Position numbers and translations under genes: made by a program
Assembly: GCA_965603825.1 (NCBI GenBank)
Contig: CBFDEM010000009.1
Coordinates: 434,001-498,000, forward strand
Length of the DNA stretch: 64,000 bases
Direction of reading: 5' to 3'
Source of the DNA: Blepharisma stoltei ATCC 30299
Taxonomy: Eukaryota; Protista; Ciliophora
Shown: in pieces, positions 30,645 through 34,567 of the stretch
How positions within the stretch are numbered: position 1 is the first letter of the stretch
Layout: each line of letters starts with the position of its first letter
Notes under the pieces: model-generated
Database searches by the model: none
What the model saw: the letters and a program-made list of their open reading frames with translations, nothing else
Told to the model about the DNA's origin: nothing

Positions 30645-31520
30645 TTACTCATTTATTTTGACTTTAAAACTAAAATCCATCTTCGGACTTCTATTTTGTG
30701 ATAGCGATTTCACATTAAACTGCGACGCACTTACAACAGTTAAATACTCGTTTATCCTATTTCTCAGCACAATCCCTAATGCTCCTTCACTGTCTCCTCG
30801 AGTTTTTATAATTAAATCAGGACTAAACCTATATTGACAGCCAAATTTTACCTCTACAGTTTTTTCACTTGTATAGATGAAGGAAGAGCCTAATTTTAAG
30901 TCTTTTTTGAAATCATAATACATTGAGCATACTAAATTTCCTAGTGAATATTCTTTTTTGTCAGTGCTTATATGCTTTATTCCTATTCTATGACGGTCAT
31001 TTGACCAAAATAATGCTGCATTATAGGTTATAAATCGTAAGGAGCGGAGTCCTAACGCAAGCTCTAGCCCGCAGCCAAAATTTTTATGTTTTGCTACAGT
31101 ACTTATGTTTAGAGAAGGATAATCAGTAATAGAAAATTTAGTCCTGTGCTTTTCAGTGATCTGCTCTATGGAGATTGATTTTTTTTGTGAATGGGAATCT
31201 GCATTATGGTCAAGCTCAAATTGAAGCGTGGAATTTGGGTATTTTGGATTAGTGTATTCGACAAAAGACTTGAAGAACTTAGACGTAAATATTTCTTGCT
31301 TAAATAAAAACTGGGGAATAGAGTAGCTAAAGTAAACTGAGCCGATTGTAATTGGAATATGGTTGTCACTAGGTATCTGTCTGATTGAAGATTTAGTTTT
31401 CAAGTCATCAGCTGCCTTTGCATATAGTGAAATCGCCGCAATTTGGTTAAAACAGTAGCCTTTTTCAAGTAAATCTTCTTGAAGCTTAGTTATACGATCA
31501 AAACTTTCAAGTTTTGCCAT
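30645..31520 (-). CDS. Eukaryotic porin (VDAC/Tom40 superfamily)-like beta-barrel
   Basis: 291 aa with an N-terminal helix (DLLEKGY), amphipathic beta strands and a C-terminal F.F.V.I beta-signal. Confidence 0.7.
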   Translation of the reverse strand: MAKLESFDRITKLQEDLLEKGYCFNQIAAISLYAKAADDLKTKSSIRQIPSDNHIPITIGSVYFSYSIPQFLFKQEIFTSKFFKSFVEYTNPKYPNSTLQFELDHNADSHSQKKSISIEQITEKHRTKFSITDYPSLNISTVAKHKNFGCGLELALGLRSLRFITYNAALFWSNDRHRIGIKHISTDKKEYSLGNLVCSMYYDFKKDLKLGSSFIYTSEKTVEVKFGCQYRFSPDLIIKTRGDSEGALGIVLRNRINEYLTVVSASQFNVKSLSQNRSPKMDFSFKVKINE

Positions 31521-31636
31521 TTATAAACGAAAAAGGCTTTCAGAAATTAATGAAAATAACACCCAACGAAAATTTTATATTAGAAATATTTTAGTATAAG
31601 AATTCTCCATTGTTATTTTCTGCATCATAATATATA

Positions 31637-33508
31637 ATGGGCTGTGGAGGATCAAAGAAACCGAAAGAGGAAACCAAAAAAGTTGAGGAAAAACATGAAG
31701 AAAATAAGCACGACATTACAAATGGAGGTGAAGGAGAAAAGCCTACTAATCAGCCAGAAACTAAAACAACTGAAGAAGGCCAAGCAGGTGGCCATGCAGG
31801 GACCCTCATCTTTGAAGGCAACCGACTTCTTAAAAAAGCCAAAAAAGGCGAAATCGATTTCTTTCAATATCTCTATAGCCCAGACCAAACAGACCAAGAT
31901 ATAATTGAGCTCAGAAAATTCGCCCCAAGTTTCTACGGAATTGAAGAGCGAAATAACGAGCGCTACATTTCAATGGAAAATTTGCTTACAGGATATGATT
32001 ATCCAAATATCATGGACTGCAAGCTTGGAAGGATTACATGGACACCTCACCATACTGAAGAAACCAAAGCCCATCAAGAAGCCAAAAATAAAACCACCAC
32101 AACTGGCTCTTTAGGCTTCAGAATTTCAGGAATCGTTACCAAAGATTCCCATGGCAAAAAACTCGAAGCTTGGGCCAAAAAAGAAGGCTTTTTTGGCATT
32201 AATGAAGGAAATATACATGAGCAGTTCGCAAAAATCGTGACCCATGACGGAAAAATCAATTATGAAGCTATCGATATTTTTATTAGAGGGACAATAGAAA
32301 TATTATACTGGTTTAAAAGGCAAAAAACAAAGCATTTTGTAGCAAGCTCAGTATTTTATGTCAGTGGGAAAAATAATAAACATCAGGTGAGGTATATTGA
32401 TTTTGCACATGCAATTGAGGCGAATGGAGAAATTGATAATAATGTTATTGAAGGGCTGGAAAATTGTGTGAAAATTTGGGAAAAACTAAAAAATCCAATG
32501 CCACAGCCTGTAGCTTCAGGTGATCAAGCAGGCGGGCATGAAGGCAGCTTGATTTTTAGAGGAAATAAGCTGCTTAAAAAAGCCCATCCTGCTGAAATTG
32601 GGTTTTATAGCGCGCTGTTTGACCCACAGCTAGAAAATACTGAATTAATCGAATTCCGTAAATTTGTGCCATATTATTATGGAGTGGAAATAATAAATAA
32701 CAAAAATTATATTGTCCTTGAAAATGTGCTATTTGGGTATGAGCACCCTAATGTATTAGACTGCAAAATAGGAAAAGTCACCTGGACTAAAGACCATAAT
32801 GAAGTAAAAACTAGAAAACAGCAAGAAAAAGCAAGGACTACCACAACTGGATCTCTAGGCTTCAGGATTTCTGGCTTGATAACCAAAGATGAATATGGGA
32901 ATAAAATAGAATCCTGGAGCAAAGATGGTGGATATTTCAATATAACCCCAGAAAATATTCATGAGCAGCTGGCAAAAATTGTTCACAGAGGAGAAACTTT
33001 TCAGCTTGACAGAGTAGAGCTCCTAATAAAGCAAACCCAAGAAATATTAAACTGGTTTACAAGGCAGCGGTCTAAGCTATTTTTCACTGCTTCTGTTTTA
33101 TATGTAAACGGCACTGACAAAGCCCAAGCTCGATTTATTGATTTCGCTCACGTTTTTGATGCAGAAGGGCATGAAGATATAAGTAATTTCTAAATAGACA
33201 CAAGAGAAGGACTAGAAAACCTTATAAAATGCTGGCAAGAAGTCATAAGGAAATACTGCGCTCCCCAAGAGAGAGTAAAACCCCAAAAATTCCCTTATGA
33301 AGTTACTTTGGAAGAAGGAAAAACCTACCATTACTGTGACTGTGGAAGGTCAAAAACGCAGCCATTTTGTGATGGTTCTCATATTGATACCTCTTTTGCC
33401 CCAATTGAAGTAGTGGTTAATGAGACTAAGCTTTATCATCTCTGCGGCTGCAAATCTACCAAAAACAAGCCTTATTGCGATGGCTCTCATACTAAATTAG
33501 ACTGGTAG
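31637..33508 (+). CDS. N-acylated tandem inositol polyphosphate kinase (IPK x2) fused to two CDGSH Fe-S motifs, 618 aa; intron 33183-33197
   Basis: MGCGGSK N-terminus. Two copies of QAGGH / LEN / P...DCK.G / SLGFRISG / IDFAH. Intron GTAATTTCTAAATAG joins these in frame to CDCGRSKTQPFCDGSH and CGCKSTKNKPYCDGSH. Confidence 0.9.
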
Positions 33509-33526
33509 CTTATTTTTTAAATAATT

Positions 33527-34567
33527 TTAATCTCTATAATTTCTTGGTATTTTATTTCTCTCTGGGAATTTTTGTCTGTCAATGTCTTTGCTCTCTGTCC
33601 CCTTCATGCTTGATATCTGAAGCTGCAAACCTTTTAATGACTCTATATGGTCTGCTACAGACTGTGGGCTAATAAAGCACTTCATACTGACAGTCCTATC
33701 ATAGTTTTGCAGTTGAGAAGTCTCAGCTTCTACCTTTAAGAACAATTTTTCTTTGCTTTCTGCATAAAAGTCAATTAATTCTCTGCTATTGGCCTGCTGT
33801 AGTATTTTTGAGACATTGCTGTATAGTTCCCCAATAGATGTAACTTTTGAGGCTAAAGCGCGACTTATGGCATCTAATTCTTTTAAATTTTCTTCTAAAA
33901 ATCTGTCAGCTTGAGATGTTAATTCTTTTTCTTTTTTATCCAATCTTGCTCTTAAGTCTTCAAAAGCGTGCTTTATTTGTTGTTTGGCTGTATGAGATTG
34001 GTCTAATGTTTCTTTTTTCCGTTGCTCTATTTTTTCTTCAAGGTTTTGAAGCTCATCTTGCTTATTGGAAAGGAGAAGGAGCATGTCTTCAACTTTTCCT
34101 TTTATGATAGGAAATGCTGTTTTTACTCTCATAACTTCGTGGCCTTTATGCAGACCATGAATTGCACATTCTGAGCAGATGCATTCTGATTCACACTCAA
34201 AACAATAATAATTAGGAACTTCGTCTGGGTGATCTTTGCAGTATTCTTGAGGAGGCTCCCAATTTTGTTTGTATTGATCAGAAGTGGTTAAGTCTCCTTC
34301 ATCAAGTTCTGAGTCTTTTGGCTCTTCTAAATTAAGCTTGAGAAGCTCATTCGCGCTTGAAGGGTCTAGGATAGTTGAGGAACGGCATATATCACAAGCA
34401 ACTTTCTACATGGAAAATACATAAAAAGGCTCATTTTCTTTAGAATAATCTTTGAGAATATTTCTAGCTGAGCACAACAAGCAAAGATTATGATCGCACG
34501 TAAGAATTAACATATCTGAAGGCTGTCTTCCGCATTTTGCACAAGTCATGGCCATAAGTGAGTCCAT
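33527..34567 (-). CDS. RING + B-box + coiled-coil (TRIM/RBCC-like) protein; intron 34406-34420
   Basis: CAKC..LTCDHNLCLLC..CDIC (RING); CKDH...YCFEC...ICSEC...HKGH (B-box2); followed by coiled coil. Confidence 0.85.

What the first reader, a model, noticed from the sequence alone, without database searches (positions are those of the whole stretch)
31637..33508. Membrane-anchored double inositol-phosphate kinase fused to tandem CDGSH [2Fe-2S] motifs
Seen: a canonical 15-nt intron (33183-33197) removes the apparent stop. The next exon first completes IPK domain 2 (NTREGLENLIKCW, mirroring NVIEGLENCVKIW of domain 1), then runs in frame into two complete C-x-C-x2-S/T-x3-P-x-CDGSH motifs. Both kinase repeats keep PxxxDxKxG and IDFAH. 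Known: MGC.. is a myristoyl/palmitoyl signal; IPMK/IP6K-family kinases normally have one catalytic domain; a double CDGSH is the CISD3/MiNT-type redox- and pH-labile Fe-S module. Inference: this could be an iron/redox-gated inositol (pyro)phosphate signalling enzyme whose two active sites may act sequentially. I know of no described protein with this architecture.
Basis: partly seen in the sequence, partly recalled or inferred. Interest (0 to 1): 0.88.

Follow-up and report, generated by a model that had tools for sequence, protein, structure and literature searches.

The report
Lipid-anchored double inositol kinase with iron-sulfur tail
A ciliate gene, shown here to be transcribed and spliced, joins two inositol-phosphate kinase domains to a small module predicted to hold two iron-sulfur clusters; no search found this combination outside the lineage, and it hints that inositol signalling is tied to redox or iron state.

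Summary
The gene runs from 31637 to 33508 on the + strand. It has one 15-nt GT..AG intron at 33183-33197.

- **Transcript:** assembled contigs from three runs lack exactly those 15 letters. One contig runs 31605-33549 and ends in a poly(A) stretch.
- **Protein (618 aa):** an MGCGGSKK acylation motif, an acidic/basic linker, two complete IPK domains closest to IPMK, then a double-CDGSH module. The model of that module matches 3TBN (TM 0.93) and MiNT (TM 0.89).
- **Conservation:** a paralogue on contig 36, a 95%-identical relative's transcript, and an orthologue of the contig-36 paralogue (58% identical) share the plan and the intron position. dN/dS is about 0.1 for the CDGSH part.
- **Domain origin:** the two kinase domains belong to different old paralogue groups. 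They are not a recent duplication.
- **Novelty:** tandem IPKs arose at least twice more in ciliates, so doubling is not unique. The IPK-CDGSH fusion appeared nowhere else in 1.84 billion representative proteins, metagenome contigs or the literature held.

The genome fits the *Blepharisma stoltei* somatic assembly. Redox or iron gating remains inference; a docking test gave only weak support. The inositol pyrophosphate reading has no support: IPK1 and PPIP5K were not detected.

The scan noted this same stretch twice, in overlapping windows, and not on other DNA.

The parts
31605..31636 (+). 5' untranslated region. The transcript contig starts at 31605, and there is no ATG upstream of 31637.
31637..33182 (+). 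Exon 1: 515 codons plus the first base of a split Asn codon.
31637..31660 (+). MGCGGSKK: predicted N-myristoylation (Gly2, Ser6) and S-palmitoylation (Cys3) signal followed by basic residues. The same start is found in the paralogue (MGCGISKK), in P0001 (MGCGISSKK) and in single IPKs of Stentor and related sequences.
   Evidence: lipidation itself was not tested
31661..31774 (+). Low-complexity Lys/Glu-rich spacer between the anchor and kinase 1.
31775..32485 (+). IPK domain 1 (aa 47-283). Motifs: QAGGH, LLKK (ATP lysine), ENL, PNIMDCKLG, ASSVFYV, IDFAH, closing helix GLENCVKIW.
32486..32518 (+). Linker of about 11 residues between the kinases. It has low confidence in the model (pLDDT below 50).
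32519..33182 (+). IPK domain 2, the part in exon 1 (aa 295-515). Motifs: QAGGH, LLKK, ENV, PNVLDCKIG, TASVLYV, IDFAH.
33183..33197 (+). 15-nt phase-1 intron GTAATTTCTAAATAG holding the in-frame TAA. It is absent from the RNA contigs. An intron sits at the same place and phase in the paralogue and in L001.
33198..33508 (+). Exon 2, including the TAG stop at 33506-33508.
33198..33259 (+). Closing helix of IPK domain 2: (N)TREGLENLIKCWQEVIRKYC.
33275..33505 (+). MiNT-type double-CDGSH module (77 aa), tethered by a linker of about 5-10 residues, ending ..KLDW.
33335..33382 (+). CDGSH motif 1, CDCGRSKTQPFCDGSH. Predicted cluster ligands: Cys, Cys, Cys, His.
   Evidence: the ligand columns are invariant in 63 sequences
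33443..33490 (+). CDGSH motif 2, CGCKSTKNKPYCDGSH.
33509..33549 (+). 3' untranslated region. The poly(A) addition site is at about 33549. This region overlaps the end of the convergent B-box gene.

Best explanation
This is a real, expressed gene of a Blepharisma-type heterotrich ciliate. It encodes a 618-aa protein that is probably held at a membrane by an N-terminal myristoyl/palmitoyl anchor.

The protein carries two catalytically intact kinase domains of the IPMK type. They descend from two different old paralogues. Most likely they phosphorylate soluble inositol phosphates that arise from PLC-made InsP3, possibly at different positions or steps.

Directly behind the closing helix of kinase 2 sits a self-contained MiNT-like module. 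It is predicted to bind two labile 3Cys-1His [2Fe-2S] clusters. My preferred mechanism is that the state of these clusters (oxidised, reduced or lost through ROS, acid pH or iron shortage) changes how the module folds or packs against kinase 2. Inositol-phosphate output would then follow redox or iron status.

Shown here: the gene model, the splice, the domain identities and folds, conservation under purifying selection, and the restricted distribution. Inferred: lipidation, cluster binding, the substrates, and above all the coupling between cluster and kinase.

Rough odds: the fusion is real, 0.97. It binds Fe-S, 0.85. Both kinases are active, 0.65. The cluster state regulates the kinase, 0.4.
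For: - **Splice and poly(A):** seen in RNA contigs.
- **Domain hits:** Pfam finds IPK twice and zf-CDGSH twice.
- **Catalytic motifs:** all are kept in both kinases.
- **Kinase fold:** the exon-1 model has pLDDT 81. It matches the human IPMK core with TM 0.87-0.88, against 0.78 for EhIP6KA and about 0.65-0.75 for IP3K. The best sequence match in PDB is also IPMK, E 2e-20.
- **CDGSH fold:** the model has pLDDT 96.8. It matches 3TBN with TM 0.93 (rmsd 0.6 A) and MiNT 6AVJ with TM 0.89. All eight ligand positions are invariant or nearly so in 63 homologues.
- **Conserved architecture:** the same plan and intron occur in the contig-36 paralogue, in L001/P0001 and in P0002.
- **Selection:** dN/dS is 0.10 for the CDGSH module and 0.06 for kinase 2 against the relative.
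- **Domain origin:** the tree places d1 near the single contig-40 IPK, in an unresolved part of the tree. It places d2 in a 91/94 clade that also holds the Stentor-type MGC kinases.
- **Anchor distribution:** only the two CDGSH fusions among the seven IPK genes of this genome carry the MGC start. Two small stand-alone double-CDGSH proteins carry it too.
- **Pathway context:** the genome has a PI-PLC and at least 10 InsP3-receptor ligand-binding domains.
- **Docking:** CDGSH on kinase 2 scored ipSAE 0.36 against a best control of 0.00, which the tool rates 'weak support'.
- **Precedents:** the S. pombe Asp1 inositol pyrophosphatase domain hosts a [2Fe-2S] cluster (PMC8038993). Bacterial CDGSH modules are fused to a nucleotide cyclase (P0156).
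Against: No biochemical data exist for any member.

- The docking score falls in the band where passes are more often wrong than right.
- The arrangement of the two kinase domains is not defined (pTM 0.54).
- The SSLL motif reads SSVF and ASVL.
- Domain 2 of the paralogue and of P0001 is more divergent (IDFEY; QAGGH lost in P0001), so the second site may not do the same thing in all members.
- CDGSH proteins also act as cluster donors or electron carriers without regulating a partner.
- The CDGSH tree is unresolved, so the origin of the module is unknown.
- All RNA runs come from one study and are labelled RNA only by guess. The intron loss and the poly(A) end argue that they are RNA.
Confidence: 0.5

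Rival explanations
1. The fusion serves co-localisation, with no allosteric control. The CDGSH pair would be a membrane-proximal Fe-S donor or electron carrier, as MiNT and mitoNEET are thought to be. The fusion merely places it beside a kinase. One possible reason is that highly phosphorylated inositols chelate iron and could assist iron or cluster handling.
For: The same genome has two small MGC-anchored double-CDGSH proteins with no enzyme attached, and about nine double-CDGSH genes in all. The module therefore has a life of its own at membranes. The docking test gave only weak support. In Tetrahymena, CDGSH proteins serve as subunits of mitochondrial complexes.
Against: The fusion, with its short tether, is kept in two paralogues and in an organism only 58% identical, under strong purifying selection. 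That suggests functional coupling. CDGSH is also fused to another second-messenger enzyme in bacteria.
Confidence: 0.22
2. The membrane anchor points to a lipid substrate. Like mammalian IPMK, one or both domains would phosphorylate PtdIns(4,5)P2 or another phosphoinositide rather than soluble inositol phosphates.
For: Human IPMK is the nearest match by sequence and by fold, including the entry 5W2I soaked with a PtdIns(4,5)P2 analogue. The predicted dual acylation and long flexible spacer would hold the active sites at the bilayer. That mammalian IPMK has PI 3-kinase activity is established knowledge, recalled and not tested here.
Against: No residue-level test of lipid specificity was possible. 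Membrane tethering equally suits capture of freshly made InsP3. The single MGC-anchored IPKs of Stentor are uncharacterised.
Confidence: 0.15
3. Only one kinase domain is catalytic. The other would be a ligand-binding or regulatory pseudo-kinase, so the protein is not a two-step enzyme.
For: Domain 2 drifts in the paralogue and in P0001: IDFEY, loss of QAGGH, and R to K in the TTTGSLGFR segment. It also has longer branches in the tree.
Against: In the window's gene both domains keep every motif checked: Lys, ENL/ENV, PxxxDxKxG and IDFAH. dN/dS for domain 2 is 0.06. Even the divergent copies keep the D.K.G motif and the IDF aspartate.
Confidence: 0.12
4. The fusion is an artefact: a chimeric gene model made by read-through, mis-assembly or a chance open frame after the intron.
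For: None found. The only caution is that the runs are labelled RNA by guess and come from one study.
Against: Three independent contigs have the exact 15-nt deletion, and one has a poly(A) end. The in-frame junction is present in a relative's transcript-derived protein. The same layout occurs in a paralogue and in another organism's genomic contig. Selection is purifying.
Confidence: 0.01

Closest known systems
Inositol polyphosphate multikinase (IPMK / Ipk2 / Arg82; PDB 5W2G-5W2I, 4FRF, 2IEW)
   Same: Each half has the IPK fold, with TM 0.87-0.88 to the human IPMK core. Each keeps the PxxxDxKxG inositol-phosphate motif, the N-lobe ATP lysine and the IDFAH metal-binding segment, which is identical to human IPMK.
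   Different: There are two kinase domains in one chain, from different paralogue groups. The protein has an N-terminal acylation signal and a C-terminal Fe-S module. Substrates are unknown, and sequence identity is only about 25%.
Inositol hexakisphosphate kinase (EhIP6KA, PDB 4O4B-4O4F)
   Same: It belongs to the same family, has a similarly compact size (about 240 aa) and shares the motifs. It is the second-best structural neighbour, TM 0.78.
   Different: It scores lower than IPMK in both sequence and fold. The enzymes that would make its substrate and extend its product (IPK1, PPIP5K) were not detected in this genome, though non-detection is not proof of absence.
MiNT / CISD3 (PDB 6AVJ) and the bacterial 'Miner2 homologue' type-6 CDGSH protein (PDB 3TBN)
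   Same: A single chain carries two CDGSH motifs that form a pseudo-dimer. All eight ligands are present. TM is 0.89 and 0.93, with 47-52% identity.
   Different: Here the module is a C-terminal domain of a kinase, not a free protein. It has no mitochondrial presequence, because the N-terminus is an acylation signal. It is therefore a look-alike and not an orthologue in location or role.
S. pombe Asp1 (PPIP5K/Vip1 family) pyrophosphatase domain with a [2Fe-2S] cluster (PMC8038993)
   Same: It is the only precedent I found for an Fe-S cluster within an enzyme of inositol-phosphate metabolism.
   Different: The fold is unrelated (a histidine-acid-phosphatase-like domain), the ligands are not of CDGSH type, and the enzyme class differs.
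Bacterial CDGSH fusions: Glu-synthase-like, FNR-type reductase, cupin, and adenylate/guanylate cyclase with Rieske and Fer2 (P0031-P0102, P0150-P0157)
   Same: A double or multiple CDGSH module is appended to an enzyme. In one case the enzyme makes a second messenger.
   Different: The partner enzymes and the domain of life differ. None of them carries an IPK domain.
Other tandem IPK proteins of ciliates: contig-3 gene of this genome (= P0003) and Nyctotherus ovalis P0139
   Same: Two complete IPK domains in one chain.
   Different: Their two domains are each other's closest relatives, which marks a recent internal duplication (100/99 and 98/96 support). They have no MGC start and no CDGSH.

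Membership tests
IPK superfamily (Pfam PF03770) | Profile match above the curated cut-off | tested here: met
   111.7 and 105.5 bits for the two halves, against a cut-off of 22.2.
IPK superfamily (Pfam PF03770) | PxxxDxKxG inositol-phosphate-binding motif | tested here: met
   PNIMDCKLG in d1 and PNVLDCKIG in d2.
IPK superfamily (Pfam PF03770) | IDF(A/G) metal-binding aspartate and N-lobe ATP lysine | tested here: met
   IDFAH appears twice and LLKK twice. Lys, Ile-Asp-Phe and others are invariant across seven tandem IPKs.
IPK superfamily (Pfam PF03770) | SSLL motif in the C-lobe | tested here: inconclusive
   It reads ASSVFYV in d1 and TASVLYV in d2. The serine is kept, but Leu-Leu is replaced by Val-Phe or Val-Leu.
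IPK superfamily (Pfam PF03770) | Kinase fold | tested here: met
   AF2 model with pLDDT 81. TM is 0.87-0.88 and rmsd 2.2 A to the human IPMK core.
IPK superfamily (Pfam PF03770) | ATP-dependent phosphorylation of an inositol phosphate | not testable with these tools
   This needs an enzyme assay.
IPMK subfamily, as opposed to IP6K or IP3K | Closer to characterised IPMKs than to IP6K or IP3K | tested here: inconclusive
   IPMK is best by sequence (76 bits, against 62 for EhIP6KA and 46 for IP3K) and by fold (0.87 against 0.78 and about 0.7). The margins are small, and all heterotrich IPKs form their own clade.
CDGSH / NEET iron-sulfur domain (Pfam PF09360) | Profile match above the cut-off, twice | tested here: met
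   73.9 bits in two stretches, against a cut-off of 29.5.
CDGSH / NEET iron-sulfur domain (Pfam PF09360) | 16-residue motif C-X-C-X2-(S/T)-X3-P-X-C-D-G-(S/A/T)-H supplying 3 Cys + 1 His | tested here: met
   CDCGRSKTQPFCDGSH and CGCKSTKNKPYCDGSH. The ligand columns are invariant or at least 90% conserved in 63 sequences.
CDGSH / NEET iron-sulfur domain (Pfam PF09360) | Binding of a [2Fe-2S] cluster | not testable with these tools
   This needs UV-visible, EPR or Mossbauer measurements on purified protein.
MiNT / CISD3-type (two CDGSH in one chain) | Monomeric pseudo-dimer fold | tested here: met
   pLDDT 96.8. TM is 0.93 to 3TBN and 0.89 to 6AVJ.
MiNT / CISD3-type (two CDGSH in one chain) | Free-standing mitochondrial matrix protein with a presequence | tested here: not met
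   The module is the C-terminal domain of a 618-aa protein whose N-terminus is MGCGGSKK. It resembles MiNT in fold but is not an orthologue in context.
Dually acylated (SH4-like) membrane anchor | Met-Gly start with Ser/Thr at position 6 and Cys at position 3 | tested here: met
   MGCGGSKK is the first ATG of the transcript contig. It is conserved in the paralogue, in P0001 and in the Stentor-type IPKs.
Dually acylated (SH4-like) membrane anchor | Actual myristoylation and palmitoylation, and membrane location | not testable with these tools
   This needs metabolic labelling, acyl-exchange chemistry or localisation.

The most novel reading that the evidence does not exclude
The protein would be the missing link between light and calcium in the pigmented heterotrich Blepharisma. 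In this reading, photo-excited blepharismin produces ROS and a local pH drop at the cortex. The membrane-tethered, acid- and oxidant-labile CDGSH clusters sense this. They then switch the attached kinases, which reshape the InsP3/InsP4 pool that drives the step-up photophobic response. The older physiological reports of InsP3 and pH changes in Blepharisma phototransduction are recalled from memory. They could not be retrieved from the library.
Probability: 0.08. Interest if true: 0.85.

Novelty: new variant of a known kind. Interest (0 to 1): 0.62.

Why it matters
Gene fusions often reveal functional partnerships. Here a kinase family central to eukaryotic second-messenger and phosphate signalling is joined to the NEET/MiNT type of labile [2Fe-2S] module. 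That module is studied in human disease, but its molecular outputs remain unclear.

If the cluster state controls the kinase, this would be a natural, compact example of redox or iron input into inositol-phosphate signalling. The only comparable case I found is the Fe-S cluster of fission-yeast Asp1. It would also give the NEET field a direct enzymatic read-out.

The window's copy has no in-frame TGA. It can therefore be expressed in ordinary hosts without recoding, which makes the idea cheap to test. The lineage restriction and the lack of any biochemistry temper the score.

Tried and rejected
- **Mixed alignment for folding kinase 2 with the CDGSH pair.** MAFFT laid the C-lobes of single IPKs onto the CDGSH region, so I discarded the alignment and folded the parts separately.
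- **CDGSH tree, to find the donor of the fused module.** It is unresolved because the domain is short and the bootstrap had not settled. No conclusion was drawn.
- **Docking of the CDGSH pair on kinase 2.** The result was weak support only: ipSAE 0.36, runs 0.29-0.40, best control 0.00, partner pLDDT at least 88, contacts agreeing in at least 97% of cases. That band holds 5 of 78 solved pairs and all 4 mismatches that passed. I do not count it as evidence of a defined interface.
- **Model of exon 1.** Each domain folds, but pTM is 0.54 and the linker is disordered, so nothing can be said about how the kinases sit together.
- **Searches for further fusions.** None had IPK next to CDGSH. Searched: CDGSH-region words among proteins of 202-644 aa, an exhaustive profile-free scan of 1.84 billion representatives (follow-up), 77 metagenome loci scanned for IPK motifs, and the ESM Atlas. 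These are limited by clustering, by gene callers that stop at the intron's TAA, and by pattern scans.
- **Literature.** No relevant paper combines CDGSH with inositol polyphosphate kinase. Nothing was found on ciliate IPKs. The CDGSH phylogeny paper does not mention kinase fusions or ciliates. The run SRR24908292 could not be tied to an organism.
- **IPK1 and PPIP5K.** Neither was detected. The six-frame, exon-by-exon search and the controls do not allow a claim of absence.
- **Earlier notes of the scan.** They held only the same stretch, read twice.
Full report
**What is in the sequence**

On the + strand an ATG at 31637 opens a frame of 518 codons. It stops at a TAA inside the 15-nt element GTAATTTCTAAATAG, at 33183-33197. 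This is the only GTA..TAG 15-mer in the gene. Removing it joins the last base of exon 1 to AC, giving an Asn codon. The frame then continues TREGLENLIKCW... for 102 further codons to a TAG at 33506-33508.

Pfam finds two IPK domains in exon 1, at 111.7 and 105.5 bits for the halves. It finds two zf-CDGSH hits in exon 2, at 73.9 bits. I searched the spliced model exon by exon and by reference only. I never built or submitted the joined sequence.

**Is it transcribed and spliced?**

Four runs of one study hold the stretch. I laid their contigs on 31500-33600.

- Contigs of three runs cover the gene with exactly 15 letters left out at 33183 and no other gap.
- One contig starts at 31605, ends at 33549 and carries a loose A-run there, as a polyadenylated mRNA would.
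- The runs are labelled RNA only by guess. The precise intron loss, the poly(A) end and the gene-sized contigs argue that they are RNA.
- The first ATG of this transcript is the MGC codon.

A protein fragment from a close relative, P0002 (95% identical, from a transcript-like contig), reads straight through the junction as HEDINTREGLENLIKCW and on into both CDGSH motifs.

**Which organism?**

The window is contig 9 of a 41,464,486-base, 64-contig assembly. Its genes use in-frame TGA as a sense codon and have 15-nt introns. This fits the published *Blepharisma stoltei* ATCC 30299 somatic genome: 41 Mbp, 64 telomere-to-telomere sequences, UGA read as Trp, and 15-16-bp introns (PMC9942806). This is an inference from matching figures, not a named record.

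**Anatomy of the protein (618 aa)**

- **Anchor.** MGCGGSKK fits the N-myristoylation consensus (Gly2, Ser6), with Cys3 available for palmitoylation and basic residues behind it.
- **Spacer.** About 40 Lys/Glu-rich residues follow.
- **Kinase 1 (aa 47-283) and kinase 2 (aa 295 to about 535).** Each keeps QAGGH, the LLKK lysine, ENL/ENV, PxxxDxKxG, a Ser-containing SSLL-like segment, IDFAH and the closing GLEN..W helix. The two are 51% identical.
- **Kinase fold.** An AlphaFold model of exon 1 folds both domains (pLDDT 81) but leaves their mutual position open: pTM is 0.54 and the linker is disordered.
- **Nearest relatives of the kinases.** The best structural neighbours are human IPMK (TM 0.87-0.88), plant IPMK (0.81), EhIP6KA (0.78) and IP3K (about 0.65-0.75). 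The order by sequence is similar.
- **Fe-S module.** The last 77 residues hold CDCGRSKTQPFCDGSH and CGCKSTKNKPYCDGSH. The model has pLDDT 96.8. It superposes on the bacterial two-CDGSH protein 3TBN (TM 0.93, 0.6 A) and on human MiNT (TM 0.89). Sequence E-values are 7e-25 and 4e-19. The eight ligand columns are invariant or nearly so in 63 homologues.

**Relatives and history**

The same genome holds a paralogue on contig 36 (L013 832-3024).

- It starts MGCGISKK, has two IPK and two CDGSH domains, and contains four TGA-Trp codons.
- It has a 15-nt intron at the identical place and phase.

A genomic contig of another organism (L001) encodes P0001, which is about 58% identical to both B. stoltei fusion proteins. 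By the tree it is an orthologue of the contig-36 paralogue, not of the window's gene. It has the same intron followed by a two-CDGSH exon ending KLDW.

Against the close relative, dN/dS is 0.10 for the CDGSH module and 0.06 for kinase 2, at dS 0.33-0.43.

The genome has seven IPK genes. Three are tandem: the two fusions and a 495-aa contig-3 gene without anchor or CDGSH, which is 97% identical to the MMETSP protein P0003. The other four are single.

In a maximum-likelihood tree of 28 domains, cut before the intron so that nothing had to be joined, the result was as follows:

- The first domains of the fusions lie near the single contig-40 kinase, in an unresolved part of the tree.
- Their second domains fall in a 91/94-supported clade that also holds the Stentor-type MGC-anchored single kinases and the remaining B. 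stoltei IPKs.
- The two domains of the contig-3 protein are sisters (100/99), as are those of the Nyctotherus ovalis protein P0139 (98/96).

So tandem IPKs arose at least three times in ciliates. In the fusion the two domains are old, distinct paralogues whose union predates the split of the two fusion genes.

**How rare is the fusion?**

- A word-based search with the CDGSH region among proteins of 202-644 aa returned 103 CDGSH proteins. Only P0002 had IPK. The others were glutamate-synthase-like, cupin, ArgK-like, ferredoxin-like or cyclase fusions, mostly bacterial.
- An exhaustive scan of 1.84 billion representatives gave 4,026 hits. The top of the list held no protein with both domains, apart from P0001, which is truncated at the intron stop. 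Multi-stretch hits proved to be tandem IPKs or CDGSH-reductase and CDGSH-cyclase fusions.
- Seventy-seven metagenome loci with related CDGSH pairs had no IPK motif nearby.
- The ESM Atlas offered only plain IPK clusters.
- The literature search found no relevant paper.
- InterPro could not be queried. The public annotation of this genome may well list the protein as uncharacterised.

**Genomic context of function**

The genome encodes a canonical PI-PLC and at least ten InsP3-receptor-type ligand-binding domains. InsP3 is therefore made and sensed.

IPK1 and the PPIP5K N-domain were not detected. This weakens the pyrophosphate reading but does not exclude it.

About nine genes encode double-CDGSH proteins. 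Two are small proteins that start MGCC/MGCF. One has a weak RIIa-like N-terminal domain. Among the IPK genes only the two CDGSH fusions start with MGC.

**Mechanism**

The best-supported picture is a membrane-tethered tandem IPMK-type kinase with a tethered MiNT-like module bearing two [2Fe-2S] clusters. NEET-type clusters are redox-active, and their loss is promoted by acid pH and oxidants. That is established knowledge of the family and was not tested here. A module fixed by 5-10 residues to the closing helix of kinase 2 is well placed to pass on such changes.

A controlled docking test of the module on kinase 2 scored 0.36 against 0.00 for all three controls. The tool grades this as weak support.

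Two precedents make the idea reasonable without proving it. The inositol-pyrophosphate phosphatase domain of Asp1 holds a [2Fe-2S] cluster (PMC8038993). Bacteria fuse CDGSH to a nucleotide cyclase.

The rivals are simple co-localisation of an Fe-S carrier with a kinase, a lipid substrate, and one silent kinase domain. An artefactual gene model is excluded as far as sequence data allow.

**Verdict**

The protein is a new domain combination of two well-known families. It is conserved and expressed but confined to one ciliate lineage, and its function is untested. I rate it interesting (0.62) rather than exceptional. The parts are familiar and the mechanism is inferred. The fusion nevertheless makes a specific, cheaply testable prediction that links Fe-S and redox biology to inositol-phosphate signalling.

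Noticed in passing
G000:C36:622324-624516 (L013 832-3024, +): A second gene has the same MGC, IPK, IPK, CDGSH, CDGSH plan. It is 726 aa after removing a 15-nt intron that holds no stop. It has four in-frame TGA codons at conserved Trp positions. Its second kinase domain is more divergent (IDFEY).
   Followed up: partly
G000:C3 (L016 1459-2943, -): A 495-aa tandem IPK with no anchor and no CDGSH. Its two domains are each other's closest relatives, and it is 97% identical to the MMETSP protein P0003. Nyctotherus ovalis (P0139) has an independently doubled IPK.
   Followed up: partly
L004 1369-1698 (+) and L005 1357-1698 (+) (G000 contigs 20 and 56): Two small proteins (110 and 114 aa) consist of an MGCC/MGCF acylation start, a short spacer and a double CDGSH ending KIDW. 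They look like membrane-anchored MiNT-like proteins with no enzyme attached.
   Followed up: partly
L009 1381-1923 (-) (G000:C36, about 883 kb): A 181-aa protein has a weak RIIa-like docking/dimerisation domain (E 2e-3, below the Pfam cut-off) in front of a double CDGSH. This may be a cilium- or AKAP-associated Fe-S protein. A second, degenerate double-CDGSH gene lies about 2 kb away (L012).
   Followed up: no
window 33509-33549 against 33527-34132 (-): The 3' UTR of the kinase gene (poly(A) at about 33549) overlaps the last codons of the convergent B-box zinc-finger/coiled-coil gene. RNA contigs of two runs fuse the two transcripts into single contigs of about 2.9 kb.
   Followed up: no
window 30645-31520 (-): The divergently oriented upstream neighbour encodes a eukaryotic porin (VDAC/Tom40-type, Pfam Porin_3, E 1e-15). 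There are only about 115 bases between the two start codons.
   Followed up: no
P0005, P0007, P0008, P0010, P0133, P0154 and others: The 15-nt intron just after the IDFAH..D segment is at the same place in many heterotrich IPK genes. Prokaryote-style gene callers either stop in it (..DESK..HSKF) or read through it (..SKSYLD..). Database proteins of these organisms are therefore often truncated or carry five spurious residues.
   Followed up: partly
L002 728-739: The relative's transcript contig has a frame break between the first kinase domain and the rest (ORFs 324-728 and 739-1845). This is probably an assembly or indel error and explains why P0002 is only a fragment.
   Followed up: no
P0156 and P0101: Proteins (bacterial, judging by their neighbours in the hit list) combine four CDGSH motifs, a plant-type ferredoxin domain, an adenylate/guanylate cyclase domain and a Rieske domain. 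This is a multi-Fe-S second-messenger enzyme that seems worth its own look.
   Followed up: no
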